A DNA stretch of 64,000 bases, taken from positions 62,001 to 126,000 of the IMG/VR virus record IMGVR_UViG_3300031951_000001. One strand, 5' to 3'. Both the position numbers and the translations under genes were made by a program. The notes under the pieces were generated by a model that saw only the letters and a program-made list of their open reading frames with translations, did not search any database and was not told the origin of the DNA. This document shows positions 23,141 through 58,663 of this stretch, one piece after another. Every line of letters begins with the position of its first letter. The first letter of the stretch is position 1.

Positions 23141-23740
23141 ATGAATTCATATTTTTTCAAGATGACCCAAGCAGAAAAGAATAATATTCTTGACCAACAT
23201 AAAACAGTATATGATGGATACGCCACCCAATACGGCCAAAATAACCAACAACCATTATATGTACAAGATTTGGCTAACGACAAAGGTGGTATAACTGTGA
23301 ATAATAGAGGTGATGTTAAATCATACACAAATATGAATATCAATGAGATGTATTATAGTGTAGATGCCGAAACCGCTCCAGAAGTGTCTTTTGATTTTGG
23401 TGGTCCTGATAGCATGGCCGTTAATATGGAAGAACATGAAGATATGATTGGTGATGGACCAACAGATATGGACCACGGGACATTTGAAGATGATGAAACA
23501 GAAATGTTGGTAGGCCCTGAAGGTGAAATGGAAATATTTGTTGATGATGACGATGAGGATATGGATACAATGAGAGGTCGTTTCTTTGATGACGAGGATA
23601 TGGAATCAGAATGGGATGAGCCAAAATTTGACAAGATTGATTTGTCAAAATCAGATGATATTGACATGGACCAATTGGAACCACTTGAAGAACAAGTTAA
23701 TAAAACATTGGACATGTTTAAAAGAATAATTGGCAGATAA
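23141..23740 (+). CDS. acidic hypothetical protein (possibly head-associated)
   Basis: Very D/E/M-rich; ends LEEQVNKTLDMFKRII; TATTTAT upstream. Confidence 0.65.
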   Translation: MNSYFFKMTQAEKNNILDQHKTVYDGYATQYGQNNQQPLYVQDLANDKGGITVNNRGDVKSYTNMNINEMYYSVDAETAPEVSFDFGGPDSMAVNMEEHEDMIGDGPTDMDHGTFEDDETEMLVGPEGEMEIFVDDDDEDMDTMRGRFFDDEDMESEWDEPKFDKIDLSKSDDIDMDQLEPLEEQVNKTLDMFKRIIGR

Positions 23741-23780
23741 TCTGTATTTTAATTTTTTTTTTAATATTTGTTAAGAAAAG

Positions 23781-24122
23781 ATGGATATTATGGAAATCAA
23801 AGAATTAGTTTCATATAGTGTGAACGAAACGACTCAAACTTTGGATGTTACATTCAGATTAATTGAGGATAGCGATGATGAAATCAGAACAGACCAAATT
23901 GGTTTAGATGAAATAAAGAAATTTGGTTATTCTTTTTTAGATAACGATTCAATTAAATTCAGCGACTTATTTGAGGAAGATGAAGAATATGCCGACTTCG
24001 ATGATTTCGATGACGAAGATGAATATCTTGAAGAATCAATCGACGAAGGAGAAGTGGTTTCTTTTTTGACTGAATATTATTTAGTTAATTCAAGAAATTT
24101 ACCAAACGCAGAATTGTTTTAA
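23781..24122 (+). CDS. acidic hypothetical protein
   Basis: 113-aa ORF. Confidence 0.6.
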   Translation: MDIMEIKELVSYSVNETTQTLDVTFRLIEDSDDEIRTDQIGLDEIKKFGYSFLDNDSIKFSDLFEEDEEYADFDDFDDEDEYLEESIDEGEVVSFLTEYYLVNSRNLPNAELF

Positions 24123-24625
24123 GGACCAATTCTTGTCATCTGTAAGGTTATCGATTTTTGGGATAATTCCGTTTCATCATAATACCATTGACCTGTTGTT
24201 CTCAAGGTCAAGCTTTCAAGACCATCGTCTATAATTTTGAATAAAACTCTACGACCTGGTATATTAAATTCAACATAACCAGGGTCATGTATGGACCAAG
24301 ACGGAATCAAATCGTAGAAATATTTTTCAGACCATTCATACTCACCCCATGGAGTGGGAGTAGGACTAAAACAAACGGCACTATAGTCAAAGTGCCAACG
24401 AGAAGAACCGACTTCAATAAAATCGGTAGGGAAATCAGACAACGTATCAGAGTATATATCACCTGGTAAATAGATACTATCGTTAGGTGACCCAAAACTT
24501 TCATTATTCAAAACCGTAATTTTATCAATAACATACTCACCTGATAGAGTTGGAGTGGTTTGTTCTGCGTATCTATAACAAGAAGTTAGACATACGACAA
24601 AAAATAAAATCAGTGTGTTCTTCAT
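24119..24625 (-). CDS. lipoprotein
   Basis: Lipobox CLTS-C; ATG 6 nt after TATATTTG. Confidence 0.65.
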   Translation of the reverse strand: MKNTLILFFVVCLTSCYRYAEQTTPTLSGEYVIDKITVLNNESFGSPNDSIYLPGDIYSDTLSDFPTDFIEVGSSRWHFDYSAVCFSPTPTPWGEYEWSEKYFYDLIPSWSIHDPGYVEFNIPGRRVLFKIIDDGLESLTLRTTGQWYYDETELSQKSITLQMTRIGP

Positions 24626-24674
24626 AATGGGCAAATATAAATTAAATTTTCTATACTACAAAATATTTATCATT

Positions 24675-24935: not shown

Positions 24936-24966
24936 AAAGATATATTTATTAAAAAACCATTTTAAA

Positions 24967-25875
24967 ATGAACAAAAGACAAATTGCTGAGGAAGAGTTAA
25001 AAAGAGCTCTACTCATGATGAAATACGATAGTCGTAAGACTTTAACTGAAAATATTAACAGTAATCAATTAATTACCGAAATAATTCCTGCCGCCTTTCT
25101 TACGATACCTTGGCTTACCACGTATGGGATTGCCGCGGCTAGCTCAATAGGTGCTTGGATTTACAACACTTCTGGTGGAGGAGATGCTTTTGCAAAAACT
25201 CAAGCGTTTTTTCAAGGATGTAATTCAAATACTAAAAATTTAAAACCCACTTTGGGTAAAAGTGAGCACAGGGCCGCCGCAGATAAAATATATAATGCAA
25301 TTGAGGGGGTGGGAACAACACTTAACGATATAAAATCGGCCTTTTCTGAAATGACAACCGTAGCTGACATTTGTGCTATGTACCAGTACTATAATAATAC
25401 CTATGGTGATTTATATGATGATTTGGATAGTGATATTGATGGGGAAGATTTTAGAAAGTATGTTTGGTCGGCAATAGCCCCGCAAGTTGCTGATGCGGAA
25501 GAAGAATTAAACAAAGTCCAAGCAAATCCTGAAACGACTGATGGTAAAAAAACCGAAGATGGTAAAAAAACCGAAGATGGTAAAAAAACCGTATATACTG
25601 GAGGTTCATATAAAGCATGTACTGGTACATACACTCAAGGATGTAAATCAGAAGCAATTAAAAAAGTTCAGGGTTGTTTAGGTTTAGTTGCCGACGGTAA
25701 ATTTGGACCTAAAACTCAAAAAGCTCTCACCGCTAAAGGTTTTACCGGTGGATTTACAGATGCTGATGTTGATAAGATTTGTAAAGTACAAGCGTCTCCA
25801 GAACCTAAAAAAGACGCAATTGATATGTCGGTTGACACAGGACGTGATGTTGCCGATAATAATATAGCACCTTAA
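24967..25875 (+). CDS. protein with C-terminal peptidoglycan-binding domain
   Basis: IKKVQGCLGLVADGKFGPKTQKAL; N-terminal EEELKRALLMMKYD..LTE. Confidence 0.7.
   Translation: MNKRQIAEEELKRALLMMKYDSRKTLTENINSNQLITEIIPAAFLTIPWLTTYGIAAASSIGAWIYNTSGGGDAFAKTQAFFQGCNSNTKNLKPTLGKSEHRAAADKIYNAIEGVGTTLNDIKSAFSEMTTVADICAMYQYYNNTYGDLYDDLDSDIDGEDFRKYVWSAIAPQVADAEEELNKVQANPETTDGKKTEDGKKTEDGKKTVYTGGSYKACTGTYTQGCKSEAIKKVQGCLGLVADGKFGPKTQKALTAKGFTGGFTDADVDKICKVQASPEPKKDAIDMSVDTGRDVADNNIAP
25540..25591 (+). repeat. 18-bp in-frame tandem repeat, about 3 copies (DGKKTE)
   Basis: GATGGTAAAAAAACCGAA repeated. Confidence 0.9.
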
Positions 25876-25887
25876 AATCAAAAAAAA

Positions 25888-34157: not shown

Positions 34158-34493
34158 ATGGAACAACAAATTTATACTGTGGTAATCACATTGTTAACTG
34201 TTTTAACTTCTACCGCTGCGTGGAGGTATTATGAAAAAAGGATGGTGTTAAAGGCTAAACAAGAACAGGATGTACATAAAGATAGCGAAATGTATCGAGA
34301 TGACCTGAGAGAAAGAGTTGTTAAGTTGGAGACATTGTTAAATGAGTCGGCTAAAGAAAAAGATAAAATGAGAGAAAACATTGTATTATTGACTGCTCAA
34401 GTATCCAAATTAGAAGTGGAAGTTGAATTTTTAAGAAGGGATAACGAAAATCTTCGAGCCGAAAATCATTCATTAAGACAAAGATTGGTATAA
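34158..34493 (+). CDS. N-terminal TM plus coiled-coil protein (possibly lysis-related)
   Basis: Start reassigned to MEQQIYTVVITLLTVL; coiled coil; directly precedes the M23 gene. Confidence 0.65.
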   Translation: MEQQIYTVVITLLTVLTSTAAWRYYEKRMVLKAKQEQDVHKDSEMYRDDLRERVVKLETLLNESAKEKDKMRENIVLLTAQVSKLEVEVEFLRRDNENLRAENHSLRQRLV

Positions 34494-35215
34494 TGACAAA
34501 TTTTTCTTACATAACAAATACCTCTAAAGGTAGAATAACATCCCCTTTCGGTAATAGGGTACATCCTACATTAGGTAAGGTTAAAAAACATTCTGGATTA
34601 GATATTGCTCATCCAACAGGAACTGAAGTACTAGCAATGACCGATGGTGTTGTTATTCAAAGTGAAATGGCGAATAATGCTTGTGGTGGCACAATTGCTA
34701 TAGACCACGGAATGGTTGATGGAAAAAAACTTAAAACCAGATTTTGTCATAATAGTAAATTACTTAAAAAAGTAGGAGATAATGTTAAAAAGGGTGAGGT
34801 AATTGCAATTTCTGGAGGGGGTAAAAGTGATGTTGGTAGAGGTCGCTCAACAGGACCTCATATCCATTTTGAAGTGTATGAAAACGGTCAAACTGTAAAT
34901 CCAAAACCGTATTATGAGGGTTCATCAGTGGGATTAAAATCTGATAGTGAAACTACAACCGATTCAGATACCACAACTGAACCAACCAAACCAATTACCT
35001 CACAATCGAGTGATGAAGATATTGAAAATTTTATAAAATATTTGATTGGTGGTAAGGACATGACAATCGCTCAAAAAAACAAAGCTTTGATGCCACTTGT
35101 TAAACAATTATCACCAGGATTGGCGGATATTTTAAGTTCAGCAATACAAAATGAATCAACGGAATATGTTACAAAATTGACCGAAGATATAAAAAGAATA
35201 AAAAATTTACTTTAA
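34493..35215 (+). CDS. M23 family peptidase
   Basis: ITSPFG.R.HP, HSGLD, STGPHIHFEV, VNP; ends LTEDIKRIKNLL. Confidence 0.9.
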   Translation: MTNFSYITNTSKGRITSPFGNRVHPTLGKVKKHSGLDIAHPTGTEVLAMTDGVVIQSEMANNACGGTIAIDHGMVDGKKLKTRFCHNSKLLKKVGDNVKKGEVIAISGGGKSDVGRGRSTGPHIHFEVYENGQTVNPKPYYEGSSVGLKSDSETTTDSDTTTEPTKPITSQSSDEDIENFIKYLIGGKDMTIAQKNKALMPLVKQLSPGLADILSSAIQNESTEYVTKLTEDIKRIKNLL

Positions 35216-35216
35216 T

Positions 35217-35786
35217 ATGGACTATTTTTCACCAGTAAACGGAGTAGAAGCCGAAGAAAAAACGTTTTCAAAAACAGTAGAATTTAATCCAAGGTCCGAA
35301 AGTACTATACTATCTCCTGTAGACGGAACAGTAATAGACAAAAGAGGTGAAAGTATTAAAATAGAAGGTGATGATGGACATATACTAACTTTTGATAAAG
35401 TTGGTAGAGCGTCGGTCACAAATGGAAGCAGAGTTTTTAAAAAAAGAACTGTAGTAGGATATACCAAATCAGACGATGCTCTTGAGCTTACAATTTTTAA
35501 TGACAAAAATTCTAAAGTGGATGTAAAAAAATATCTAAAAGGTGAAATCGCACCAATTACTACAGGAAATGATAAGACAGGTTCATCGACTGGTAGTAAA
35601 TTATATAAAAGTACAAATGTTACTGATGGTAAAAAAATAAGTGACTACGCTTTAGTACGAGGAGTTGTAAAAGACGTGGCACTGGCCCCATTTACCGCAT
35701 TCCAAGCTCTAACAAAAGAAAGTGTTGAGGAGTCGGAAAAAATCTTAAAGGAACAAGTCGAGAGAATCAAACAATTGATGAAATAA
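35217..35786 (+). CDS. degenerate M23-like protein
   Basis: ILSPVDGTV scaffold without zinc His ligands; ends LKEQVERIKQLMK. Confidence 0.55.
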   Translation: MDYFSPVNGVEAEEKTFSKTVEFNPRSESTILSPVDGTVIDKRGESIKIEGDDGHILTFDKVGRASVTNGSRVFKKRTVVGYTKSDDALELTIFNDKNSKVDVKKYLKGEIAPITTGNDKTGSSTGSKLYKSTNVTDGKKISDYALVRGVVKDVALAPFTAFQALTKESVEESEKILKEQVERIKQLMK

Positions 35787-40957: not shown

Positions 40958-41347
40958 ATGGCAAAAGTTATTAAACTCACAGAAGCGGATTTAGAAAATA
41001 TTGTAAGAAAAGTAATAGAGGAACAAGAAACCCAAGAAGGTGTTTTTGACCCTTTGGTTAATGCGGCTCAAGGTCTAAAAGGCGTTTGGAGAGGAGAAGG
41101 ATATGACTACTTCAAATATTTGAGCTCATTGAGAGGTTTAACTCGTAAGTTAAAAAAACTTGATGCTCCGAATGTTAAAATAATGACTCAATTAACCGAT
41201 TTGAAAAATAAGGTTACCGTTTCAAAAATGCCAACCGATAAAAAACAAAATCTTATAAATACAATAGATAAAGCGATAGCTCATTTTAACGCCTATTCCG
41301 GATTGATTAATACAATAGAACAGTTAGCATCACAAAAATTAGCATAA
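40958..41347 (+). CDS. hypothetical protein with IKLTEADL leader
   Basis: MAKVIKLTEADLENIVRKVIEEQ. Confidence 0.7.
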   Translation: MAKVIKLTEADLENIVRKVIEEQETQEGVFDPLVNAAQGLKGVWRGEGYDYFKYLSSLRGLTRKLKKLDAPNVKIMTQLTDLKNKVTVSKMPTDKKQNLINTIDKAIAHFNAYSGLINTIEQLASQKLA

Positions 41348-43389: not shown

Positions 43390-43436
43390 AACTGTTTTTT
43401 TTCTAATAATAACCATTATTTTTTAAAAAAAAAGTT

Positions 43437-43679: not shown

Positions 43680-43709
43680 CAATTAACTCAACTCAAATAT
43701 TTATGAGTG

Positions 43710-45980: not shown

Positions 45981-47222
45981 ATGGGAAAATTAAAGCCTAT
46001 TGGAAGTGAAAAACTTCAGGGTATGGACAAAATCAATCGTATGATTGAGATTGCTAGATACAAAGAAAACATACCAAATCCAATCAATGAAGATGCTTCT
46101 GTTGAGTACAAAAAAGTTTTACCTGACGGACATACTTACCGAATTGATAAGGAGAAGAATGGTTATGTAATCGTTAAAGGACTTAATGAGTCTGAAATGG
46201 ATTATATTGAACCAATGAAAAATAGAAAATATTATTCTTCATACTCGCAAGCATTCAAGAGATTGAACTTAATCACCAAAGAAGTTAATAGTTTGGTGGG
46301 TAACGAAAAAAATGTTTCATTGTTCAATGAAGGTGATGAGAAGAAGGATAAAACAAAATATTTCCTGAAAATGGAACAAGCTCCTCCCACCGCGGCTCCC
46401 GCACCGGCACCTGCTCCGGCACCTGCTCCGGCGCCTGCGGAAGTACCGGCTGAAGAACCAGCTCCTGAAATGCCAGAGGAACCAATGGAACCTGAAATGG
46501 ATGCGGAGACTGAAATGGGTGATGAACAAGATGAAGAGATTGTAACTTTCAAAACCATTCAGAAATTAACAGGTAAGTTGGCTCAAAAAATTAGAACACT
46601 TGCGGCTGACGAGGAAAACCCAATGTCATCAAAAGACATTAAGTATGTAATTAATTCTGTTTTATCAGCATTTGATTTGAATTTATTGGATGAAGAAGAC
46701 AGAGATGAAATCATGGGTAAATTCGAAGGTGAAGAAATGGCAGGTGATGAGATGGGAATGGAAGATATGGGTGATATGGGTGATGAAGAAATGCCTGCGG
46801 ATGAAATGGGGGCTGAAGAAATACCTGCGGAAATGATGGAGATGTTTGATGAATATGAATCAGAAGCTCCTGAAGAACCAAGAATGGCTAAAATCAAAGG
46901 TCTTGATGACAAACATTCGTTTGGGGTTGAGGACATGATTGAAGGTTTGTTTAGTGAGTCGAAAGTTGACCAAATCCTGAAAAAATATTTCAATGTAAGT
47001 GAAACTGAAAAAGTAATCACTGAACAAAAGAAAGATAGAAAAAAAGAAATGATTTGGAAAATTAATCAGTTGAGTGAAAATGTGGAACAAGAAGTTATCT
47101 CACGTAAATTGATTAACAAATTTTCTGACGCTAAATTACTTGGCAGAACAAAGAAAAAAGATTTAGTTTTTGAAATAAATGAATCAAAAGTTAGAGTAAC
47201 CCCAAAAGGTGAAATTCTATGA
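45981..47222 (+). CDS. acidic hypothetical protein with Pro-Ala linker
   Basis: 413 aa; (PA)n and E/M/D-rich tracts; several INE/LNE/ITE/LSE motifs. Confidence 0.7.
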   Translation: MGKLKPIGSEKLQGMDKINRMIEIARYKENIPNPINEDASVEYKKVLPDGHTYRIDKEKNGYVIVKGLNESEMDYIEPMKNRKYYSSYSQAFKRLNLITKEVNSLVGNEKNVSLFNEGDEKKDKTKYFLKMEQAPPTAAPAPAPAPAPAPAPAEVPAEEPAPEMPEEPMEPEMDAETEMGDEQDEEIVTFKTIQKLTGKLAQKIRTLAADEENPMSSKDIKYVINSVLSAFDLNLLDEEDRDEIMGKFEGEEMAGDEMGMEDMGDMGDEEMPADEMGAEEIPAEMMEMFDEYESEAPEEPRMAKIKGLDDKHSFGVEDMIEGLFSESKVDQILKKYFNVSETEKVITEQKKDRKKEMIWKINQLSENVEQEVISRKLINKFSDAKLLGRTKKKDLVFEINESKVRVTPKGEIL

Positions 47223-49958: not shown

Positions 49959-51719
49959 ATGACAAAAGAACAAGTGATGATTGAATACGTTAGGTGTATG
50001 AAGGATACTTCATATGCCCTTCGTACATATCTACAAACCTATGACAATACAGTTTCAAAATACGTTCCTTTGGAATTATTCCCTGACCAGATATCCTTAC
50101 TTGAGGATTATGAGAACTTTAATGAAAACATTGCGTTAAAATATAGACAGGCGGGGGTATCTACGGTGACCGCCGCTTGGATATCAAAAAAACTGGCGTT
50201 CGCTAAAAAAATTAAGCCTGAAAAAATTCTTATAATCGCCAACAAACTTGATACATCTCAAGAAATGGCAAATAAAATTAGGGCATTTATGACACAATGG
50301 CCGTCTTGGGTTGGGATTGATTTTTCAACAGAAAAAGACTCACAGAAACATTATAAATTAAATAATGGTTGTGAGGTTAAAGCCGTGGCAACATCTAAAG
50401 ACGCATTACGTGGATTTACCCCAACGATATTAATATTTGACGAGGCGGCATTTATAGACGCTGACAGTGATTTTTGGGCGGCTTGTATGGCGTCGTTGTC
50501 TACGGGTGGTAAAGTAATAGTTGTATCAACTCCTAACGGATATGACCCAATCTATTATGAAATCTACGACCAAGCATTAAGGAATATGAACGATTTCAAA
50601 ATTTCTGAAATGTATTGGTTTAGAGACCCAAGATATACAAAAGATTTATATCTTGTTAAGACAAAAGACATTATTCATTATCTATTAAATAAAGAAGAAT
50701 ATAATCCTGATGATATTATAAGTTGGGAAAATATACCATTTGAAAAACGAGATTACGTTGAGTTAAAATCAATTATGGACACAGGTTATAAGCCATGTTC
50801 TGCTTGGTTTGAGGGGATGGTTAAGAAACTTAAGTACGACAAACGTAAGGTTTCACAGGAATTGGAATGTAACTTTTTGGGGTCAGGTGATAACGTATTT
50901 GACTCAAATTTGTTACAAAAAGTTAGGGAAAATTATATACGAGAACCACAAAATAAAATGATGGGTAACGCCCTTTGGATTTGGAAAGAACCTGTTATTG
51001 GTCATAAGTATGTGATGGGTGTCGATGTTAGTAGGGGTGATAGTGAAGATTTTAGTTCGTTTCAAATAATTGATTTTGATACTAGAGAACAAGTTGCGGA
51101 GTTTGTTGGAAAACTTCCTCCTGACACCATGGCCGATGTTTGTTACAAATGGGCAAATATGTATTCTTGTTTTGTTGTGATTGATATCACTGGTGGAATG
51201 GGCGTTTCTACCGCAAGAAAAATGCAAGAAATAGGATATAAGGACTTATATGTTGATGGTGTTGATACCGCGAACAAATGGAAGTGGGACCCAAAGGCTG
51301 CTGAAAAAATACCGGGAATAAATTTTAACAATAAACGAGTACAGATTATTGCGGCTTTTGAGGAAGCAATGAGACACGAATTTAAGATTTACAGTAATCG
51401 TTTGTTTAACGAGATGAATACGTTTGTTTATATAAACGGACGACCTGACCACCAAAAAGGTCACCACGATGACTTAATCATGTCAATCGCTATGGCTTGT
51501 TATGTTGCGGAATCTTCATTCTCACAATTAACAAAAGTTACAGAACAGACAAAAGCGATGTTAGAATCTTGGTCTGTCAGTAATAACGATAATGTAAGTG
51601 CTCAAATCGCATTTAATCCGGTAATACCAAATTATACAGATAGAACCAATCAATTTAACGGTAATAATATAACCAAAGATGATTATATGAAATACGGTTG
51701 GTTATTTGGAGGTAGATAA
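49959..51719 (+). CDS. terminase large subunit
   Basis: KYRQAGVST (Walker A-like), LIFDEAAF, STPNG, QELEC, GVDVSRG..DFS, HDDLIMS. Confidence 0.92.
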   Translation: MTKEQVMIEYVRCMKDTSYALRTYLQTYDNTVSKYVPLELFPDQISLLEDYENFNENIALKYRQAGVSTVTAAWISKKLAFAKKIKPEKILIIANKLDTSQEMANKIRAFMTQWPSWVGIDFSTEKDSQKHYKLNNGCEVKAVATSKDALRGFTPTILIFDEAAFIDADSDFWAACMASLSTGGKVIVVSTPNGYDPIYYEIYDQALRNMNDFKISEMYWFRDPRYTKDLYLVKTKDIIHYLLNKEEYNPDDIISWENIPFEKRDYVELKSIMDTGYKPCSAWFEGMVKKLKYDKRKVSQELECNFLGSGDNVFDSNLLQKVRENYIREPQNKMMGNALWIWKEPVIGHKYVMGVDVSRGDSEDFSSFQIIDFDTREQVAEFVGKLPPDTMADVCYKWANMYSCFVVIDITGGMGVSTARKMQEIGYKDLYVDGVDTANKWKWDPKAAEKIPGINFNNKRVQIIAAFEEAMRHEFKIYSNRLFNEMNTFVYINGRPDHQKGHHDDLIMSIAMACYVAESSFSQLTKVTEQTKAMLESWSVSNNDNVSAQIAFNPVIPNYTDRTNQFNGNNITKDDYMKYGWLFGGR

Positions 51720-51784: not shown

Positions 51785-53584
51785 ATGGAGAATAACAATA
51801 ATCAAATTACGGTTTGGCAAAGGTTAACGAGAGCATTTGGTCCAAATGCGTTACTCAACCAGGATTATCCAACCTACAAATTCGATAAGAAGGAGTTACT
51901 TCGCACAACTTCAAAACAAGAATACGATAAAGAGCTGTTACAAGCTCAACAAACTTTTTATTTAGCAAATCAATGGACTAAAATAGAAAGTAATCTTTAT
52001 ACCCAAGCGGTTTATTACGAACCAACAAGATTGGCTTCGTTTTATGATTATGAATCTATGGAATATACTCCCGAGATTTCAGCGGCTTTGGATATCTACG
52101 GTGAAGAGTCAACAACCGTTGACCAGAATGGTTATATGCTTCAGATTTATTCTGAATCAAAAAGAATTAAGGGTATTCTAACCGATTTATTTAACAATGT
52201 TTTAGATATTAACACCAACTTACCTATGTGGACTAGAAACACTTGTAAGTATGGTGATAACTTTGTGTATTTGAAATTAGACCCTGAAAAGGGTGTTGTT
52301 GGGTGTATGCAGTTACCGAACATTGAGATTGAGCGTTTGGAACGTGGTATGCCGGCAAAATCACAGAATGTAGAAGAACCAAAAGAAAATAGAGGGTTAA
52401 GATTTAAGTGGAAAGCAAAGGACATGGAATTTAATTCATGGGAAATTGCTCACTTTAGATTGATGGGTGATGACAGAAAGCTGCCATACGGTACATCTAT
52501 GTTGGAAAAGGCTCGTCGTATTTGGAAACAATTATTGTTATCTGAAGATGCTATGTTGATTTATAGAACATCGAGAGCACCTGAAAGAAGGGTATTCAAA
52601 GTGTTTGTTGGTAATATGGACGATAAAGATGTGGAGGCGTATGTACAACGTGTCGCCAACAAATTCAAACGTGACCAAGTTGTTGACAATAAAACAGGTA
52701 ATGTTGATATGAGATTTAATCAAATGGCCGTTGACCAAGATTACTTTATCCCTGTTAGAGACGCGGCAGCTCCAAACCCAATTGATACATTACCTGGTGC
52801 TCAAAACCTGTCAGAAATTGCGGATATTGAATATATCCAAAAGAAACTTTTGACCGCACTTCGCGTACCAAAAGCATTTTTAGGGTTTGAAGAAGTTGTT
52901 GGTGAAGGTAAAAATTTATCATTACAGGATATTCGTTTTGCTCGCACAATCAATAGAATTCAAAAATGTATGATTGCCGAATTAAATAAAATCGCAATCA
53001 TTCACTTGTTCTTGATGGGATTTGAAGATGAGTTATCAAACTTTACATTAGGGTTAACCAATCCGTCAACCCAAGCAGATTTACTTAAAATTGACGTTTG
53101 GAAAGAAAAAGTTTTATTATATAAAGACGCGGTTACCGCCATCGAAGGTATTGCACCTGTGTCAGTTTCTTGGGCTAAAAAACACGTACTTGGTTTTTCT
53201 GATGAAGAAATTAAACTTGATTTACAACAACAAAGAATTGAAAAGGCAGTTGGTGCAGAATTGACTAACACCGCAACAATCATTACACATACAGGTATAT
53301 TTGATAATATCGATAAATTATATGGTTCTATCACTGGAGGTACTGCGGCTGGAGGAGCACCACCTCCACCACCAGGAGGTGAAGAAATGGGAGGAGCTCC
53401 CCCACCATCTCCACCGGCAGGAGGTGAAGAACCGCCAATTCCCGAGTCGTTTAAGAGGGATAATTTGAAAATTTTACTAGAGAATGATAGTCTAACTGAA
53501 TCAGATAGTTTTATCGATTTATCAAGAGCTAAAAATTCTTTGGGGGAAATTGAGTCTGAATTGTCAAAACTCTTGAGGGATTGA
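51785..53584 (+). CDS. portal protein (T4 gp20-like)
   Basis: EDAMLIYRTSRAPERRVF, DYFIPVR, IDTLPGAQNL, ALRVPK. Confidence 0.93.
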   Translation: MENNNNQITVWQRLTRAFGPNALLNQDYPTYKFDKKELLRTTSKQEYDKELLQAQQTFYLANQWTKIESNLYTQAVYYEPTRLASFYDYESMEYTPEISAALDIYGEESTTVDQNGYMLQIYSESKRIKGILTDLFNNVLDINTNLPMWTRNTCKYGDNFVYLKLDPEKGVVGCMQLPNIEIERLERGMPAKSQNVEEPKENRGLRFKWKAKDMEFNSWEIAHFRLMGDDRKLPYGTSMLEKARRIWKQLLLSEDAMLIYRTSRAPERRVFKVFVGNMDDKDVEAYVQRVANKFKRDQVVDNKTGNVDMRFNQMAVDQDYFIPVRDAAAPNPIDTLPGAQNLSEIADIEYIQKKLLTALRVPKAFLGFEEVVGEGKNLSLQDIRFARTINRIQKCMIAELNKIAIIHLFLMGFEDELSNFTLGLTNPSTQADLLKIDVWKEKVLLYKDAVTAIEGIAPVSVSWAKKHVLGFSDEEIKLDLQQQRIEKAVGAELTNTATIITHTGIFDNIDKLYGSITGGTAAGGAPPPPPGGEEMGGAPPPSPPAGGEEPPIPESFKRDNLKILLENDSLTESDSFIDLSRAKNSLGEIESELSKLLRD

Positions 53585-53603
53585 TATTTATAAATAAAAA
53601 GAC

Positions 53604-54320
53604 ATGGTAAAGTTCGGTTTATTAAAATCAAAGATAGAAAAATTGATGTTAGAATCTTATTCTAACGGAACATTCAAGACTGAAATGAAAAATTTCAAAA
53701 AGAATGTATTGGAAAATAAAAACATTTCAAAACTTTTTTATCTATATGATGAATTGAATTCTAATAAAGGTTTGAATGAATCTATTGTGGATGATTATAT
53801 CTACGAATGTATAACGATATATGAAAATACAATCAATAAGATTAAAAATTCAACCCTTGTTGATTTATCTAATTGGGTGGTTAATGTAAAGTCAGATAAC
53901 AATTACTCTACTATCGACAATCTATTCTCTAATGATGTTCTCACAATTGAATCTAGATTATCTAGCAAAAAATTGATTAAAGAGTCGTTAAAGAAAAAAC
54001 CTGCAGATAAAAAAGAAGTTGTTAATTTACCATTAAGTACTATGGTAAATGTTGCTAATAAAACAATTTCTAATTTTATTGAAAGTTTGAATGAGTCTGA
54101 AAAGAAAGAATTAGTTGATTTTCTTAAGACTGACGATAAAGAATTAGAGGGTAATTTTGAGCAACTAAAAGAAAGTGTCACCAAAAAATTGGAGACAATT
54201 AAAGAGAATGCTGACACAGAAACTAAAAGTAGGATTAATGAAACTTTGGAAAAGGTGGTTTCAGAAAAATACGACAAATTTACTTATTTCAAATTAAAGA
54301 ATCTTAACGAGAATCTTTAA
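53604..54320 (+). CDS. head-module hypothetical protein
   Basis: 238 aa directly after the portal; LNES motifs. Confidence 0.7.
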   Translation: MVKFGLLKSKIEKLMLESYSNGTFKTEMKNFKKNVLENKNISKLFYLYDELNSNKGLNESIVDDYIYECITIYENTINKIKNSTLVDLSNWVVNVKSDNNYSTIDNLFSNDVLTIESRLSSKKLIKESLKKKPADKKEVVNLPLSTMVNVANKTISNFIESLNESEKKELVDFLKTDDKELEGNFEQLKESVTKKLETIKENADTETKSRINETLEKVVSEKYDKFTYFKLKNLNENL

Positions 54321-54505: not shown

Positions 54506-54599
54506 ATATAATAAATAACGCTTAAATTGAATTTTTTTTGACTACCGATACAAATATACTTATTTTTTTAAAAATAAACATCGGTAAAATGAAAAGTTG

Positions 54600-55061
54600 A
54601 TGAAAAAAGGGAAAACTTCACCAATCGCAGGATTTAAAAATGCGAAGGTGATTTATGGCACGGTAGATTCAGTTGAATTTAAGTCTTTATATTTAAACAT
54701 ACAAACTTGGGTAGAACCAATTGTTGATTCTGATAACTGGCAAAGGGTTGTATTAAATCTAACAAGGTCGATTAAACATACGGTACATGAAATATTAGAT
54801 AGATTAGTCTTTGAGGAAAACTTTATTGTGGATTTAGATTTAAGGTCAAGTGGATTATCTCTAAAGAAAAAATCGTTTTTAAATCTAGAGATAAATTTTT
54901 ATATTAAAAAGAAAGATTTAGATTTTAAATCAAAAAAATTAAAGGATATATTGAAAAAAGTAACCAAGGAAATAATATCAATACACTTCACAAAAAACGA
55001 ATACTTCAAATTTTATTTACGTAAAACCGTCAAACCAAAGGAAACTATACTACAAAGTTGA
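54600..55061 (+). CDS. hypothetical protein
   Basis: YGTVD..SLYLNIQTW..IVDLDLRSSG. Confidence 0.7.
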   Translation: MKKGKTSPIAGFKNAKVIYGTVDSVEFKSLYLNIQTWVEPIVDSDNWQRVVLNLTRSIKHTVHEILDRLVFEENFIVDLDLRSSGLSLKKKSFLNLEINFYIKKKDLDFKSKKLKDILKKVTKEIISIHFTKNEYFKFYLRKTVKPKETILQS

Positions 55062-55085
55062 AAAACAAAGTATTTATTATAAAAA

Positions 55086-55811
55086 ATGAATATGGAAGTT
55101 TTGAAACCCGGACAATCAGGCAAAGGCATTCTAATCGAATACGATGCTGGATACTTATCACCAACTGAAAAACGTAATGTTGATTTGATACATGAGTCCA
55201 AAGGAATGTTGGACCATTCAAAACCATTTGAATTCTACGCAGTACTTCAGAAATTTAACACCCCAAACAGAAACGGAAGAATATATCCTGAAAAAGTATT
55301 AAAGAGAGAAGCCGACAATTATAAGAAAATGATTAACAAGGGTATTGCTTTATCCGAACTTAATCACCCTGAGTCATCACTTGTTGACTTGGACAGAGTT
55401 TCTCATTCAATTAGTGATATATGGTGGGAAGGTCCTGTTCTTATGGGTAAATTAAAATTATTAACTTCACCAGGTTTTCATGAGAGAGGTATTGTATCAA
55501 CCAAAGGAGACCAAGCGGCAAATCTTTTAAGACAAGGTGTTACACTTGGTATATCATCTCGTGGTGTAGGGTCGCTTAAAAAAATTGGGGAACAAAACGA
55601 AGTACAGGATGACTTTGAGTTGATTTGTTTTGACCTTGTATGGTCTCCATCCACTCCTGGTGCTTATCTTTTCACTGAACCTGATGACAGATTTAAGTTT
55701 GAAGAAAACTTGGATGAGGAGAAAAAAATGAAAGCTGAAAGAGAATTTGGTGGCCCAACCGACAAATCGCTTGACTTAATGAAGAAATTGAACGATTATT
55801 TGGGTTACTAA
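55086..55811 (+). CDS. prohead core protease (T4 gp21-like)
   Basis: NRNGRIYP, ELNHP, VSH, GISSRGVGS, FDLV..PSTPGA. Confidence 0.92.
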   Translation: MNMEVLKPGQSGKGILIEYDAGYLSPTEKRNVDLIHESKGMLDHSKPFEFYAVLQKFNTPNRNGRIYPEKVLKREADNYKKMINKGIALSELNHPESSLVDLDRVSHSISDIWWEGPVLMGKLKLLTSPGFHERGIVSTKGDQAANLLRQGVTLGISSRGVGSLKKIGEQNEVQDDFELICFDLVWSPSTPGAYLFTEPDDRFKFEENLDEEKKMKAEREFGGPTDKSLDLMKKLNDYLGY

Positions 55812-55822
55812 AACTCAATAAA

Positions 55823-56032
55823 ATGGACGAAAAATATTTTGTAGCAAAAATTACAACAGACATGCCTGACTCCGAAACAGGTAAAATTAAAAAATTAAGA
55901 CAGGAAAAATTAGTTAAAGGTTATTCACCGACTGATGTTGAAGCAAAAGTGACAAAGGTTTTTGAGAACTATTCGGAAGACTGGAGAATAACAGCTATTG
56001 TAGAAAGTAAAATTGATGAAGTGATAGGATAA
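55823..56032 (+). CDS. small hypothetical protein
   Basis: 69 aa followed by a terminator at about 56055-56082. Confidence 0.7.
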   Translation: MDEKYFVAKITTDMPDSETGKIKKLRQEKLVKGYSPTDVEAKVTKVFENYSEDWRITAIVESKIDEVIG

Positions 56033-56103
56033 TCAAAAAATTATCAATAGTTGTAAAAGGAGGGGAAACCCTCCTTTTTTTTATTCTGATATATTTATCA
56101 GAT

Positions 56104-57060
56104 ATGAAAATTACAATTTCAGAGGGTCAGTATAAGATACTATCAGAATATTTCAAAAGACCAACAGACCCTATTGCCGCTCATATTAGGAAAACATTGA
56201 AAGATGTTTATTCCCCATCTAATTGGGGTAAAATTGAAAACCCTGATGAGGGTTGTGCCACCGATTTTGGGGTCATTGGGGTTTATCAGCATATACCTGG
56301 TAAAGATGAATGGTCGATACTTAACAGATTTGACACCAATACCAAAGTAAGACGAAAAATGGAGTCCTTGTTTCATGAGGATGAACCTGATACTGAATTA
56401 ACTCCTAAAAAATTCATGGAGTGGATTACTCTGAACGCAGAAAGATTATTTAAGGGTCCAATCACTGATGAATTAGTAGAATTGAATAAAACCACAATTG
56501 AGAGGGGAAATCAAAATGAAGATTATGCAATTCAAATATTACAAGAATTTTTCGGTGAGAACGCCAAAATTGTAAGATTTTGTTCTGGTGATATTAGAGA
56601 CACTAGAAAGGGAATGGATATTGCGGTAACTGCGGGTGGTAAAACATTTCACGTACAAGTAAAACCATTTACCTACATAAGAAGTTTGGTTGATAAAGAT
56701 GGTGATACTTTTTTTGAAGTAACATCAAGGGGTTTTGACTCTACAAAATATTCTGAATCAAATGTACAAGTATTTTTATTCGTTGATTTAGATAGAAAAA
56801 GATATGTTGCATTCGCTAATAAGAAAAATAAAATTAGAAAAGTAACAACTGAAATAACAAGGTATGACGAACCGTATCTGTTAAGCAATATAAATTTTGA
56901 AGGTCAAACAAAAGTTAAGTCATATAGAAACACTCCTGTCGAAGACGATATATTCAAAGTCGGAGAAAGAAGATTACAAAATCTAGAATTTAGAAAAGCG
57001 GAAATCGAAAAAATGATTGAGCTTGAAAAACAAAAGTTAGGAAAATCAGGAGAAAAATAA
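56104..57060 (+). CDS. PD-(D/E)xK-like nuclease with ITISEGQY leader
   Basis: GNQNE..D..KGMDIAV..HVQVKP. Confidence 0.55.
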   Translation: MKITISEGQYKILSEYFKRPTDPIAAHIRKTLKDVYSPSNWGKIENPDEGCATDFGVIGVYQHIPGKDEWSILNRFDTNTKVRRKMESLFHEDEPDTELTPKKFMEWITLNAERLFKGPITDELVELNKTTIERGNQNEDYAIQILQEFFGENAKIVRFCSGDIRDTRKGMDIAVTAGGKTFHVQVKPFTYIRSLVDKDGDTFFEVTSRGFDSTKYSESNVQVFLFVDLDRKRYVAFANKKNKIRKVTTEITRYDEPYLLSNINFEGQTKVKSYRNTPVEDDIFKVGERRLQNLEFRKAEIEKMIELEKQKLGKSGEK

Positions 57061-57142
57061 TAAAAAATATTTAGTATCAAAACGAATAATAAAAAATTTT
57101 TATGATTTGATACATATTTATATAGAAAAATAAAAACAAAGA

Positions 57143-58663
57143 ATGGCAAAAGAAAAATCTATTGTTGAAGAAGCAATCCTCCAAATGAAAAATTTGGAAG
57201 AAGCGGTTGCGGAAAATGCAAAAGGAATACTTGCTTCGACTATGAAGGAAGAAATCAAAGAATTAGTAAAAGAATCTCTTAACGAACAAGGCGAAGAAGA
57301 GGTTGACATGGAAGTGGACATGGAAGAACCCGAAATGGAAGATGAGGACGAAATGGACTCAGACGAAATGGATATGGGTATGGAAATGGACACTGATAAC
57401 ATCGAAGATGACGAACCTATCGACTTAACTGACAAATCAGATGAGGAGGTTTTACGTGTTTTCCAATTAATGGGTCCTGATGACCATATCGTTGTTACTA
57501 AAGATGACAGCGGTAACATTAGTGTGAAAGATACTGAAACTGACAAAGAATACATGATTGTTGGTGAAGGAGAAGAATCTGATTACACATCTATGGAAAA
57601 AGACATGTATGACATGGCGGACGACTCAGAAATGGGTGATGCTATGATGGATGACACAATGATGGATGACACAATGATGGAAGATGACGACGTTATTCCT
57701 ATGGAAGAAGAAGAATATCTATCTGAAAAAAGTGTTGAAGACATCGTTAATGACATATTCGATGAAGGTAATGAAGAACAAGAAGAAGGTTACGTCTATG
57801 AAATCGACATGAATGAAGAATCTGACGATGATGAGGATGATACTGATGAGGAATCTGAAGGTATTGTCTATGAAATCGAAATGGATGAAGAAATCGAAGA
57901 GGACATGGATGAATCATATGACCAAGAAAATGAAGGTTACTTGGAAGAAGGTAAAAAATCCACCAGGGCTAAAGGCATGGGCATGGGTAAGGCTTCAAAA
58001 TTCAAGTATCGTAAAAATCCGAATCAAGGCGAAGGGTTTAAAGTTGTTAAGAAAACCGCCAACAAAACTATGGGAACAGGAAGTGCTAAAAAAGGCTTCT
58101 CCTATGACAAGAATGGTGAAAATCTTGACGGCGAATTTAAAATTAAACCAAAAGGCGTTAAGAAGGCGGAAACAAAAGAAGCTGCACGTACATACGGAAA
58201 TGGTTCTAAAGAAGGACGTGGTTTAAGAAAAGGAATCACACCTAACAGAAACTTGAAGTTTGAAAGTGTGGATAGCAGTGAGTTACAACTTCTTCGTGAA
58301 AAGAATGAAGAATACAGAAAAGCGTTGAACGTATTCAGAAACAAATTAAATGAAGTTGCCGTGTTTAATTCAAATTTGGCATACGCAACTCGTTTATTTA
58401 CTGAACACTCAACATCTAAACAAGAGAAAATTAACATCTTGAGAAGATTTGATTCTGTTGAAACATTGAAAGAATCGAAGAATTTGTACAAATCAATCAA
58501 AGATGAGTTGTCAGGAAGTTCTGCTCAACCAATGAATGAGTCAATCGGTCAAGTAATCGAAAAGGCACCATCAACAGGTTCAGCAATCAACTTAATTGAG
58601 TCAAAAACATATGAAAACCCTCAATTCCTGAGAATGAAAGATTTGATGAATAAATTAAAATAA
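57143..58663 (+). CDS. prohead scaffold/core protein
   Basis: Highly acidic centre, C-terminal coiled coil (LNEVAVFNSNLAY), immediately upstream of the capsid gene. Confidence 0.8.
   Translation: MAKEKSIVEEAILQMKNLEEAVAENAKGILASTMKEEIKELVKESLNEQGEEEVDMEVDMEEPEMEDEDEMDSDEMDMGMEMDTDNIEDDEPIDLTDKSDEEVLRVFQLMGPDDHIVVTKDDSGNISVKDTETDKEYMIVGEGEESDYTSMEKDMYDMADDSEMGDAMMDDTMMDDTMMEDDDVIPMEEEEYLSEKSVEDIVNDIFDEGNEEQEEGYVYEIDMNEESDDDEDDTDEESEGIVYEIEMDEEIEEDMDESYDQENEGYLEEGKKSTRAKGMGMGKASKFKYRKNPNQGEGFKVVKKTANKTMGTGSAKKGFSYDKNGENLDGEFKIKPKGVKKAETKEAARTYGNGSKEGRGLRKGITPNRNLKFESVDSSELQLLREKNEEYRKALNVFRNKLNEVAVFNSNLAYATRLFTEHSTSKQEKINILRRFDSVETLKESKNLYKSIKDELSGSSAQPMNESIGQVIEKAPSTGSAINLIESKTYENPQFLRMKDLMNKLK

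What the first reader, a model, noticed from the sequence alone, without database searches (positions are those of the whole stretch)
23141..58663. Second, C-terminal tag resembling the scaffold tail
Seen: LTEDIKRIKNLL (M23), LKEQVERIKQLMK (M23-like) and LEEQVNKTLDMFKRII (23141) resemble the scaffold end ENPQFLRMKDLMNKLK. Similar helices lie near the N-termini of 24967 (EEELKRALLMMKY) and 45981 (DKINRMIEIARY). Known: scaffold C-terminal helices often bind coat protein. Inference: cargo proteins mimic the scaffold's coat-binding helix, preceded by an LxE cut site.
Basis: inference. Interest (0 to 1): 0.6.

Follow-up and report, generated by a model that had tools for sequence, protein, structure and literature searches.

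The report
Scaffold-end helix reused as head-targeting tag
In this uncultured 322-kb T4-like phage, the short conserved helix that ends the head scaffolding protein also ends (or begins) several unrelated proteins next to protease-type cut sites, so it is probably a removable address label for the phage head, although what it binds was not shown.

Summary
All six peptides exist where stated. The resemblance is real for a core group and weak for the rest.

**Core group.** The motif hydrophobic-x-R-[I/M]-[K/N]-x-[L/I]-hydrophobic occurs six times in the whole genome. Five occurrences are within 8 residues of a C-terminus and one is at an N-terminus. The C-terminal carriers are the scaffold, the M23 peptidase, its neighbour and two genes outside the window.

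**Second group.** The prohead protease and ORF 23141 share a different tail, NK[ST]LD[LM][MF]K[KR]. It fits the same register, but its link to the scaffold tail is not statistically secured.

**Conservation.** Each tail is strongly conserved in dozens of metagenomic relatives, behind variable linkers, and is flanked by conserved L/I-x-E sites.

**Outside evidence.**
- In Flavobacterium phage immuto, the scaffold's variant tail reappears at the N-terminus of two small proteins, followed by ITE-S.
- In a sample of 81 RM[QK]KLAGI sites from viral contigs, 68 end scaffold-position genes, 11–12 start other genes and 1 is internal.

**Reading.** This is most likely a removable prohead-targeting peptide, a C-terminal counterpart of the T4 capsid targeting sequence. 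Binding to the coat protein is inferred, not shown. It is a new variant of a known kind.

The parts
57143..58663 (+). Scaffolding-protein gene, the gp22 position (506 aa)
   Evidence: It lies between the gp21-like protease and the gp23-like MCP. An ortholog sits directly upstream of the MCP in about 79 related loci. It has the most Asp/Glu/Met-rich 50-aa window in the genome. It has no Pfam or PHROG match.
58481..58663 (+). Scaffold C-terminal module (last 60 aa): helix, variable linker, then helix-turn-helix
   Evidence: The module is homologous to the last 64 aa of the 470-aa protein at G000:306427-307839 (hhalign Prob 79.7%, E=1.5e-5, 52 columns). AlphaFold2 predicts helices at 2-10, 35-43 and 47-59 of the 60 aa. 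The 470-aa protein shows the same pattern.
58580..58660 (+). Scaffold tail (residues 480-506): the L-I-E site, then the terminal helix with the core F-x-R-M-K-D-L-M
   Evidence: T43 to K58 of the 60-aa alignment is invariant or nearly so in 46 relatives, whereas the whole scaffolds are only about 45-60% identical. The L-I-E site is kept in 58 of 58 orthologs.
55086..55811 (+). Prohead protease, gp21-like
   Evidence: Pfam Peptidase_S77 1.2e-24. PHROG 207, head maturation protease, 2.8e-43.
55758..55811 (+). Protease C-terminal tail (core K-S-L-D-L-M-K-K-L), outside the Pfam domain
   Evidence: The tail is conserved in 57 orthologous loci (48 distinct sequences) behind a variable linker. It is the best window for the scaffold-tail profile and for the 23141-tail profile. 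hhalign against 23141 gives P=0.0021. An N-L-[DE]-E site lies 13 residues upstream (55707-55721) and is kept in 45 of 49 orthologs.
35174..35215 (+). C-terminal tail of the M23 peptidase (gene 34493-35215): L-T-E, then I-K-R-I-K-N-L-L
   Evidence: Pfam M23 5.1e-25 on residues 32-137. The tail core V-x-R-I-K-N-L-M is kept in 72%-identical orthologs whose linker is otherwise different. It matches the regex at the extreme C-terminus. hhalign against the 470-aa protein's tail gives P=0.022.
35742..35786 (+). C-terminal tail of ORF 35217-35786: L-K-E, then V-E-R-I-K-Q-L-M-K
   Evidence: It matches the regex at the C-terminus. Its best terminal-segment partner in the genome is the tail of the 470-aa protein. 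The bodies of this ORF and the M23 gene are not detectably similar (BLASTP E=0.5). The M23 label for this ORF is below the Pfam threshold (17.6 against 28.7 bits).
23681..23740 (+). C-terminal tail of the acidic ORF 23141-23740 (core N-K-T-L-D-M-F-K-R)
   Evidence: The core [KE]-S-L-D-M-F-K-R-F is kept in orthologs down to 45% identity, and weakened (H-M-F-E-R-F) in the four most divergent loci. It pairs with the protease tail. This ORF has the third most Asp/Glu/Met-rich window in the genome.
24988..25053 (+). N-terminal helix of ORF 24967-25875, followed by T-L-T-E-N
   Evidence: The helix is conserved in most orthologs down to 26-30% identity. Three remote hits (L004, L019, L077) carry a different N-terminal motif. 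The L-x-E-N position is kept in 10 of 10 orthologs. It is the best window for the 470-aa protein's tail profile (z 4.8), but hhalign gives P=0.075. A hydrophobic stretch and a weak PG_binding_1 hit follow it.
46023..46094 (+). N-terminal helix of the acidic ORF 45981-47222, followed by I-N-E
   Evidence: The N-terminal 30 aa are nearly invariant in orthologs at 39-100% identity. It is the best window for the 470-aa protein's tail profile (z 3.8). The I/V-N-E site is kept in 15 of 18 orthologs. This ORF has the second most Asp/Glu/Met-rich window in the genome. The similarity to the tag is weak.
54282..54320 (+). Candidate member: C-terminal tail of ORF 53604-54320 (the gp67/68 position between portal and protease)
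   Evidence: The tail [YF]-[FY]-K-L-K-x-L...[LI] is conserved in 44 loci. It is the best window for the scaffold-tail profile, at the last 12 residues (z 3.7). hhalign is not significant (P=0.29).
20093..20119 (+). Candidate member: N-terminal I-D-R-I-N-D-I-L of ORF 20078-21058
   Evidence: This is the only regex match that is not at a C-terminus, and it lies at residues 7-14. It was not followed up.
58692..60545 (+). Major capsid protein, gp23-like (617 aa): the proposed but untested receptor
   Evidence: Pfam Gp23 2e-73. Almost all of residues 1-61 are invariant in 46 relatives. The I-N-E/A site at residues 58-61 is kept in 73 of 73.

Best explanation
The last helix of the gp22-type scaffolding protein is a short basic amphipathic helix on a flexible linker. 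It acts as a portable address peptide for the prohead.

**Who carries it.** The same or a similar peptide is carried by:
- the prohead protease;
- extra acidic scaffold-like proteins (23141, 45981 and the 470-aa protein at G000:306427-307839);
- cell-wall enzymes (the M23 peptidase, its neighbour, and perhaps 24967).

It sits at the C-terminus, or in some proteins at the N-terminus.

**How it would work.** During assembly the peptide docks these proteins in the growing prohead. The most likely docking site is the inner face of the gp23-like coat protein, where scaffold ends bind in phage 80alpha, P22 and herpesviruses. The gp21-like protease then cuts at the L/I-x-E site between the helix and the body of the protein. 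That frees the scaffold for removal and leaves the cargo loose inside the head.

**Shown:** the motif, its terminal position, its conservation, its sharing among non-homologous proteins, the flanking sites, and the presence of the protease.

**Inferred:** packaging into the head, cleavage at the sites, and the binding partner.
For: 1. **Terminal position.** 6 of 6 regex matches in the genome are terminal, 5 of them C-terminal.
2. **Homologous end modules on otherwise unrelated proteins.** The scaffold and the 470-aa protein share the end module (E=1.5e-5) but not the rest (whole-protein BLASTP E=0.7). The protease and 23141 tails pair at P=0.0021.
3. **Purifying selection on tails behind variable linkers** in five or more families.
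4. **The carriers form a coherent head set.**
   - The scaffold and the protease are certain prohead components.
   - The four most Asp/Glu/Met-rich proteins of the genome all carry the tag.
   - The others act on or bind peptidoglycan.
5. **Co-variation across lineages.**
   - In phage immuto the scaffold ends ...SEQVSRWQKLAGIIK. Two small proteins begin MKKQILSEQF[KR]RMQ[FK]LAGIITES. The better copy is the top proteome-wide hit of the scaffold tail, E=0.001.
   - Of 81 RM[QK]KLAGI sites sampled from viral contigs, 68 are at the extreme C-terminus. 61 of those are directly upstream of a gp23-like MCP gene. 11-12 sites are at the extreme N-terminus, most followed by I-x-E, and 1 is internal.
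6. **Cut-site geometry.** Conserved L/I-x-E lies upstream of the C-terminal helices and downstream of the N-terminal ones. The protease is an S77 gp21 homolog, and T4 gp21 cuts after L/I-x-E (PMC9026906).
7. **Precedents.**
   - T4 gp21 and Alt lose C-terminal pieces, and the gp21 propeptides have been proposed to target it into the prohead.
   - The 80alpha scaffold and SaPI1 CpmB share a C-terminal helix-and-hook that binds the coat N-arm (PMC5644958).
Against: - There are no virion or prohead proteomics for this phage or any relative, so neither packaging nor cleavage is demonstrated.
- Within this genome alone, cross-family similarity is not significant by single-family PSSM, leave-one-out HMM or BLAST.
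- Joining the scaffold-type tail and the protease/23141-type tail into one class rests on a shared register and on best-window position, not on a significant score (P=0.2).
- A DnaB-like helicase also has RIKDLL near its end, so the short motif is not fully specific.
- In T4, internal proteins are said to be targeted to the scaffolding core rather than to the shell (PMC3012670). That favours a core receptor over a coat receptor.
- L/I-x-E is frequent in Glu/Leu-rich helices. Only its conservation gives it weight.
Confidence: 0.55

Rival explanations
1. The function is the same (a prohead address peptide removed by the protease), but the receptor is the scaffolding core itself, not the coat. 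The terminal helix is a scaffold self-association element, and tagged proteins co-polymerise with the scaffold by mimicking it.
For: [quoted passage not shown]
- How core proteins are localised remains unknown (PMC9958956).
- The carriers include several scaffold-like acidic proteins.
- The module shared by the scaffold and the 470-aa protein spans about 60 aa, including an upstream conserved helix, not just the last helix.
Against: - In every system where a scaffold's C-terminal end has been resolved, it contacts the coat protein (80alpha; herpesviruses).
- The scaffold body is variable while its tail and the first 100 residues of the MCP are nearly invariant. A receptor in the scaffold body would be expected to be conserved as well.
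Confidence: 0.25
2. The tails do different jobs that happen to need a basic amphipathic helix. In the M23 proteins and 24967 they would act on membranes or the outer membrane, as cationic C-terminal helices do in some endolysins. In the scaffold and the protease they would be assembly elements. The resemblance across groups would then be convergent helix chemistry, not a shared receptor.
For: - The three cell-wall-related carriers have no signal peptide and could be lysis enzymes rather than virion proteins.
- Cross-group statistics are weak.
- The claim that cationic amphipathic C-terminal helices occur in endolysins of phages of Gram-negative hosts comes from my own knowledge and was not checked here.
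Against: - This does not explain why specific residues (hydrophobic-x-R-I/M-K-x-L-hydrophobic) and the flanking L-x-E are kept in the same register in the M23 family, ORF 35217, the 156-aa family and the 470-aa family.
- It does not explain the exact N-terminal copies of the scaffold tail in immuto-type phages.
Confidence: 0.12
3. Chance or compositional resemblance among helical, Lys/Glu/Leu-rich termini of an AT-rich phage proteome, with no shared function.
For: - Single-genome scans give cross-family scores inside the shuffled-proteome range.
- The helicase false positive.
Against: - Terminal position in 6 of 6 regex matches, against 0.46 matches expected in total.
- Profile-profile P values of 1e-3 to 1e-5 against 0.17-0.36 for controls.
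- Strong conservation in dozens of orthologs.
- The independent replicate in other phage lineages.
Confidence: 0.05

Closest known systems
T4 capsid targeting sequence (CTS) of the internal proteins IPI-III (Mullaney and Black 1996, as cited in PMC9958956 and PMC9026906)
   Same: A short terminal peptide on otherwise unrelated proteins. It lies next to an L/I-x-E site cut by a gp21-type protease. It is proposed to load proteins into a T4-type prohead and then be removed.
   Different: - The T4 CTS is N-terminal, about 10 residues long, and is not known to resemble the scaffold's own end.
- Here the tag is mostly C-terminal and is shared with the scaffold and, more loosely, the protease.
- In relatives it occurs at either terminus.
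- Function is untested here.
Phage 80alpha scaffolding protein and SaPI1 CpmB: shared C-terminal helix-and-hook with the RIIK motif (PMC5644958)
   Same: A second, non-scaffold protein carries a copy of the scaffold's C-terminal amphipathic helix with conserved basic and hydrophobic residues, and so uses the scaffold's site.
   Different: - CpmB is a satellite's competitor that resizes the capsid. Here the copies are the phage's own proteins, and there are several of them.
- The binding site on the coat N-arm is solved for 80alpha and unknown here.
- There is no sequence relationship.
Herpesvirus UL26/UL26.5 (protease-scaffold and scaffold sharing the C-terminal MCP-binding tail, released by M-site cleavage; PMC12474303). 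By my own knowledge, also lambda C/Nu3.
   Same: The protease and the scaffold both end in a tail that brings them into the procapsid, with a maturation cut just upstream of the tail.
   Different: - There the shared tail comes from nested, in-frame genes and is identical.
- Here the genes are separate, the protease and scaffold tails are only loosely alike, and further proteins carry it.
P22 scaffolding protein C-terminal helix-turn-helix coat-binding domain, and its engineered use to load cargo (PMC9962691)
   Same: - A basic helix-turn-helix at the extreme C-terminus of a scaffold. AlphaFold2 predicts helix-turn-helix for the last 27 residues here.
- Fusing it to foreign proteins loads them into P22 shells. 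This phage would be doing the same thing naturally.
   Different: - The P22 scaffold is recycled and not cleaved.
- Natural cargo mimicry is not known for P22.
- There is no sequence relationship, and the fold here is only predicted at pLDDT about 70-77.
C-terminal propeptides of prohead proteases in T4 (gp21), phiKZ gp175 and SPN3US gp245, and of T4 Alt (PMC9026906, PMC10052503)
   Same: The protease here has a conserved C-terminal tail behind a variable linker and an L-x-E-type site. This fits a C-terminal propeptide.
   Different: - In SPN3US all other known propeptides are N-terminal.
- No shared C-terminal motif has been described in those systems.

Membership tests
T4-type capsid targeting sequence (removable prohead-targeting propeptide) | A short peptide at a protein terminus, shared by non-homologous proteins | tested here: met
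   Regex position statistics, profile comparisons, and no similarity between the protein bodies.
T4-type capsid targeting sequence (removable prohead-targeting propeptide) | Adjacent L/I-x-E site for a gp21-type protease, on the side facing the mature protein, with such a protease encoded | tested here: met
   The sites are present and conserved: 58/58 scaffold, 42/43 for the 470-aa family, 45/49 protease, 10/10 for 24967. The protease matches Pfam S77 at 1.2e-24. This is sequence evidence only; cleavage was not observed.
T4-type capsid targeting sequence (removable prohead-targeting propeptide) | N-terminal location, as in IPI-III | tested here: not met
   Six carriers in this genome have it at the C-terminus. 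N-terminal versions exist in 24967 and 45981 (weak) and in immuto-type phages.
T4-type capsid targeting sequence (removable prohead-targeting propeptide) | Necessary and sufficient for packaging into the head | not testable with these tools
   This needs reporter fusions or deletions and virion analysis.
Scaffold C-terminal coat-binding element (P22, 80alpha, herpesvirus type) | At the extreme C-terminus of the scaffolding protein, amphipathic with conserved basic residues, and the most conserved part of the scaffold | tested here: met
   The gene lies in the gp22 position between protease and MCP.
Scaffold C-terminal coat-binding element (P22, 80alpha, herpesvirus type) | Binds the inner face or N-arm of the major capsid protein | not testable with these tools
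   No usable result was obtained (see Tried and rejected). It needs prohead cryo-EM, peptide binding assays, or multi-subunit co-folding.
Shared protease/scaffold tail (herpesvirus UL26/UL26.5, lambda C/Nu3 type) | Protease and scaffold end in the same tail | tested here: inconclusive
   The register [RK]..D-L-M-x-K-L is shared, and each tail is the best window for the other's profile. hhalign gives P=0.2.
Shared protease/scaffold tail (herpesvirus UL26/UL26.5, lambda C/Nu3 type) | The tail is shared through nested, in-frame genes | tested here: not met
   The protease (55086-55811) and the scaffold (57143-58663) are separate genes with another ORF between them.
Peptidase M23 (carrier proteins) | Pfam PF01551 above the gathering score | tested here: met
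   ORF 34493-35215 scores 87.9 bits against a 28.7-bit cut-off. ORF 35217-35786 scores only 17.6 bits, so its 'M23-like' label is not met.
T4-like head module (context) | Portal gp20, protease gp21, scaffold position and MCP gp23, in that order | tested here: met
   Portal_T4 2.1e-77, S77 1.2e-24 and Gp23 2e-73. The order matches T4 genes 20-67-68-21-22-23.

The most novel reading that the evidence does not exclude
Across a large, mostly uncultured clade of T4-like phages (freshwater jumbo phages, Flavobacterium and Microcystis phages), the end of the scaffolding protein is a universal address code that can be placed at either terminus. Any protein that carries a copy, with an L/I-x-E site between the copy and its body, is loaded into the prohead and released inside by the protease. 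That would explain how T4-type cores recruit their contents. It would also allow internal or ejected head proteins, including cell-wall hydrolases, to be predicted from sequence alone in uncultured phages.
Probability: 0.4. Interest if true: 0.75.

Novelty: new variant of a known kind. Interest (0 to 1): 0.62.

Why it matters
- **An open question in T4 biology.** A 2023 review states that how proteins are localised to the scaffolding core 'remains mysterious' and that the core structure is unresolved (PMC9958956).
- **A concrete hypothesis.** Recruitment would work by mimicry of the scaffold's end, through a peptide shared by the scaffold, the protease and several unrelated proteins, usable at either terminus and flanked by protease sites.
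- **A cultured system exists to test it.** Flavobacterium phage immuto has two clear N-terminal copies of its scaffold tail.
- **Two uses if true.**
  - It gives a sequence-only way to list the head-internal proteins of uncultured jumbo phages.
  - It gives a natural tag for loading proteins into T4-type capsids.

Tried and rejected
1. **Co-folding.** The MCP (alignment A1) was co-folded with the last 60 aa of the scaffold (A2) using complex prediction. The result was no answer (ipSAE 0.00 in both runs, controls not run).
2. **Eight-seed HMM with leave-one-out.** Only the 470-aa protein and ORF 35217 ranked first. The scaffold ranked 7, 23141 ranked 4, the protease 17, 24967 ranked 20, M23 ranked 79 and 45981 was not found. 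HMMER is weak on 12-17-residue motifs.
3. **Genome-wide single-family PSSM scans.** Cross-family hits reach the top 4-13, but at 7-12 bits, which is inside the range of the top hits from shuffled proteomes.
4. **Unbiased all-against-all comparison of terminal 26-mers.** It is dominated by the N-terminal paralog-like families. The tag tails form a mutual top-5 cluster (scores 30-34) but do not stand out globally.
5. **Scanning every scaffold window against all protein termini.** Uninformative, because low-complexity acidic windows dominate.
6. **Is the abundant N-terminal LTESDL..IVKRVI.E family the same tag?** No. Its profile maps to the scaffold's N-terminal helix (33-48), not to the tail.
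7. **DnaB-like helicase.** It has RIKDLL 17 residues from its end and is treated as a chance hit.
8. **tblastn of the scaffold against isolate phage records.** No match.
9. **Literature search for the motif strings.** No paper found.
10. **T4 gp21 and gp22 ends.** They were read. Both are amphipathic, and gp21 ends ...EAMKKAL, like the protease here. No convincing shared motif is seen in T4 itself.
11. **First attempt at the all-against-all script.** It timed out.

Full report
**Context.** The window is bases 62001-126000 of a single 322,372-bp contig at 34% G+C. It is a jumbo phage with a T4-type head module. That module reads: terminase large subunit 49959-51719, portal 51785-53584 (Portal_T4 2.1e-77), two small ORFs (53604-54320 and 54597-55061), a gp21-like protease 55086-55811 (Peptidase_S77 1.2e-24), an extra ORF 56104-57060, a 506-aa acidic protein 57143-58663 in the gp22 scaffold position, and a gp23-like major capsid protein (MCP) 58692-60545 (Gp23 2e-73). 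The order matches T4 genes 20-67-68-21-22-23. The nearest isolate phages are distant, at about 40% MCP identity: Microcystis phage Mel-JY01 and Flavobacterium phage immuto. IMG/VR holds hundreds of close uncultured relatives: 593 confirmed MCP matches, the best 80 at 76-100% identity.

**The observation.** All six peptides are present at the stated ORF ends. I aligned them on the conserved Arg/Lys. This gives a common register: L-x-E-x-hydrophobic-x-[RK]-[MI/x]-[KL]-[DNQ]-[LM]-[MLF].

**Further members.** A genome-wide search found more, outside the window.
- A 470-aa protein at G000:306427-307839 ends ...LNEEFDRMKQLLGY...
- A 156-aa protein at G000:160617-161087 (minus strand) ends ...ITESLKRINELIKKII.

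**Is it more than chance?** The regex [FILVM].R[IM][KN].[LI][ILMF] matches six times in 366 ORFs (102,332 residues), against 0.46 expected from shuffling.
- Five matches are within 8 residues of a C-terminus: the scaffold, M23, ORF 35217, the 156-aa protein and the 470-aa protein.
- The sixth is at residues 7-14 of ORF 20078.
- Given that 3.3% of windows are C-terminal, the binomial P is 2e-7. The regex is post hoc, but position was not part of it.

Profile-profile comparison of full-length ortholog alignments puts the top local alignment at the termini:

| Pair | Regions aligned | P |
|---|---|---|
| Scaffold vs 470-aa protein | 446-503 vs 406-464 | 0.0011 |
| Protease vs 23141 | 206-238 vs 171-199 | 0.0021 |
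| 470-aa protein vs M23 | 451-463 vs 228-240 | 0.022 |
| 470-aa protein tail vs 24967 N-helix | 454-470 vs 9-25 | 0.075 |
| Controls with MCP, portal or protease | – | 0.17-0.36 |

(All.) On the last 60-64 residues alone, scaffold against the 470-aa protein gives Prob 79.7% and E=1.5e-5 over 52 columns. The whole proteins are not similar (BLASTP E=0.7). The bodies of M23 and ORF 35217 are not similar either (E=0.5), so those tails are not simply a recent tandem duplication.

AlphaFold2 gives the same layout for both end modules: a helix, a low-confidence linker, then a helix-turn-helix.

**Where support is weak.** Using only this genome's single sequences, cross-family hits do not exceed the null. 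The protease/23141 tail (NK[ST]LD[LM][MF]K[KR]) is clearly one pair. Its union with the scaffold-type tail rests on shared register and on each being the other's best-scoring window, not on a significant score.

**Conservation.**
- **Scaffold.** The tail N-L-I-E-S-K-T-Y-E-N-P-Q-F-[LM]-R-M-K-D-[LI]-M is almost invariant in about 78 orthologs, whereas the scaffolds are only 45-60% identical overall.
- **470-aa family.** [IL]-N-E-E-F-x-R-M-K-x-L-[IM]-G-Y..K-T-Q is kept down to 35% identity.
- **Protease.** N-K-S-L-D-L-M-K-[KR]-L is kept behind a variable linker in 57 loci.
- **23141 family.** [KE]-S-L-D-M-F-K-R-F is kept down to 45% identity, and weakened in the four most divergent loci.
- **156-aa family.** [IV]-T-E-[SN]-L-K-R-I-N-x-L-I-K-K-I-I is kept down to 34% identity.
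- **M23 orthologs.** V-x-R-I-K-N-L-M is kept although the preceding linker is rewritten.
- **N-terminal helices.** Those of 24967 and 45981 are also highly conserved.
- **L/I-x-E sites** lie between helix and protein body and are conserved: L-I-E 58/58 (scaffold), [LI]-N-E 42/43, N-L-[DE]-E 45/49 (protease), T-L-x-E-N 10/10 (24967), [IV]-N-E 15/18 (45981). The MCP's own I-N-E/A is kept in 73/73.

**An independent link.** Ranking all proteins by their richest Asp+Glu+Met 50-residue window puts the scaffold, 45981, 23141 and the 470-aa protein in places 1 to 4. Three carriers therefore look like additional scaffold or core proteins. The other carriers are related to peptidoglycan: M23 (5.1e-25), a sub-threshold M23-like ORF, and 24967 with a hydrophobic segment and a weak PG_binding_1 hit.

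**Replication in other lineages.** This is the strongest evidence.
- Distant gp22-position proteins end with a variant of the same tail. Immuto ends ...IISEVSEQVSRWQKLAGIIK. Mel-JY01 ends ...ILNESNNVVERMKKLAGIVK. An uncultured 484-kb phage ends ...ILNEDVEMKSRMQKLADIS.
- In the immuto genome, two small proteins (25470-25865 and 111631-112095) begin MKKQILSEQF[KR]RMQ[FK]LAGIITES. This is a near copy of that phage's own scaffold end, followed by I-T-E-S. The better copy is the top non-self hit of the scaffold tail in the immuto proteome (E=0.001).
  - 68 are 0-4 residues from a C-terminus. 61 of these are immediately followed by a gp23-like MCP gene, and 6 more run off a contig end.
  - 11-12 sites are at residues 7-16 of other ORFs, most of them followed by I-x-E.
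  - One is internal.
- The tag therefore co-varies with the scaffold's end between lineages and is used at either terminus.

**Mechanism.**
- **Established for T4.** gp21 cuts after L/I-x-E. The N-terminal CTS of the internal proteins loads them into the core and is then cut off. gp21 and Alt also lose C-terminal pieces, and the gp21 propeptides have been suggested to target it into the prohead (PMC9026906). How core proteins are localised is called mysterious (PMC9958956).
- **Established elsewhere.** The scaffold's C-terminal helix binds the coat N-arm in 80alpha and is mimicked by SaPI1 CpmB (PMC5644958). Herpesvirus scaffolds bind the MCP by C-termini that the protease removes (PMC12474303).
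- **Inferred here.** The shared helix docks its carrier in the assembling prohead, and the flanking L/I-x-E site lets the protease detach it.
- **The receptor.** I favour the coat protein. Scaffold ends bind coat wherever this has been resolved, and the tail and almost all of the MCP's first 100 residues are invariant while the scaffold body drifts. A receptor in the scaffold core is a serious rival. My one co-folding job returned no verdict and is not used as evidence.

**Comparison and novelty.** It works like a T4 CTS. It differs in three ways: it is mostly C-terminal, it is a copy of the scaffold's own end, and it is shared loosely with the protease. In SPN3US, every propeptide except the protease's own is N-terminal (PMC10052503). 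No paper in the library contains the motif strings. I rate it a new variant of a known kind.

**Limits.**
- Genes were called with a greedy longest-ORF rule, not a gene finder.
- There are no expression or proteomic data.
- Several statistics are post hoc.

Noticed in passing
G000 coordinates outside and inside the window; window 40958-41347 and 18572-19006 are members: A large family of ORFs begins MKK[IV]I[RK]LTE[SA][DE]L..IV[KR][KR].I.E, with at least 9 genes across the genome. Other N-terminal motif families also exist: MKYLITESKL..., L[IL][TS]EEE[KQ]..I..LH and MNLKE[ST]I[KR][KR]ILREE. All of them contain L/I-x-E. The LTESDL profile does not match the scaffold's C-tail. Its best scaffold window is the N-terminal helix 33-48, and the 470-aa protein has two such segments.
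   Followed up: partly
window 58412-58456 (scaffold residues 424-438) and 23162-23209 (ORF 23141 residues 8-23): The scaffold's internal segment ...SKQEKINILRRFD... resembles the N-terminus of 23141 (...TQAEKNNILDQHK...) and the EEEK..I..LH N-terminal family (hhalign P=0.04). Other parts of the scaffold may also be mimicked.
   Followed up: no
window 56104-57060: The 318-aa ORF between the protease and the scaffold is present in only 6 of about 80 related loci. It has only a weak PHROG hit. It is probably a mobile insertion in the head module.
   Followed up: partly
window 58692-58990 (MCP residues 1-100): Almost all of the MCP's first 100 residues are invariant in 46 relatives whose middle insertion varies freely. 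The MCP also has a variable insertion of about 260 residues with Cys-rich motifs that the Gp23 Pfam model does not cover.
   Followed up: partly
window 43707-45923: A 738-aa protein combines a nucleotidyltransferase-like N-terminus with M23 peptidase and PG_binding_1 domains. It is a third M23-type gene within 12 kb. No tag was seen at its ends.
   Followed up: no
window 14658-16523 and 41359-43416 (minus strand): The phage encodes a ClpB-like double-AAA+ protein (AAA_2 2.8e-68). It also has a 621-aa ORF that starts [14 protein letters not shown]..., which looks like Hsp70/DnaK by my own knowledge. That ORF was not scanned.
   Followed up: no
G000:C1:306427-307839 (locus L103): Besides the scaffold-type end module, the 470-aa protein has C-x-x-C pairs and a D-K-N-N-N-G-R-L-D-S-E-D stretch that looks like an EF-hand loop. 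It has no Pfam or PHROG match.
   Followed up: no
G000 window coordinates 116447, 117335 and 118199 (outside the window): Three neighbouring ORFs share Gly-rich C-termini ending ...GGKGG[DQ]G.VII.[CW][WF]. They are likely paralogous fibre or surface proteins.
   Followed up: no
L218 (T4, NC_000866) genes 21 and 22: T4 gp21 ends ...AYMALAEAMKKAL and gp22 ends ...DIVSVYAKVASRF. The gp21 end resembles the ...DLMKKL... tail of this phage's protease. The protease tail may therefore be ancient in the S77 family.
   Followed up: partly
G000 window coordinates 180583-181965 (locus L104): The DnaB-like replicative helicase (PHROG 19, 2e-64) carries RQRIKDLLEKRK 17 residues from its C-terminus. I took this as a chance match. 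Ortholog conservation was not checked.
   Followed up: no
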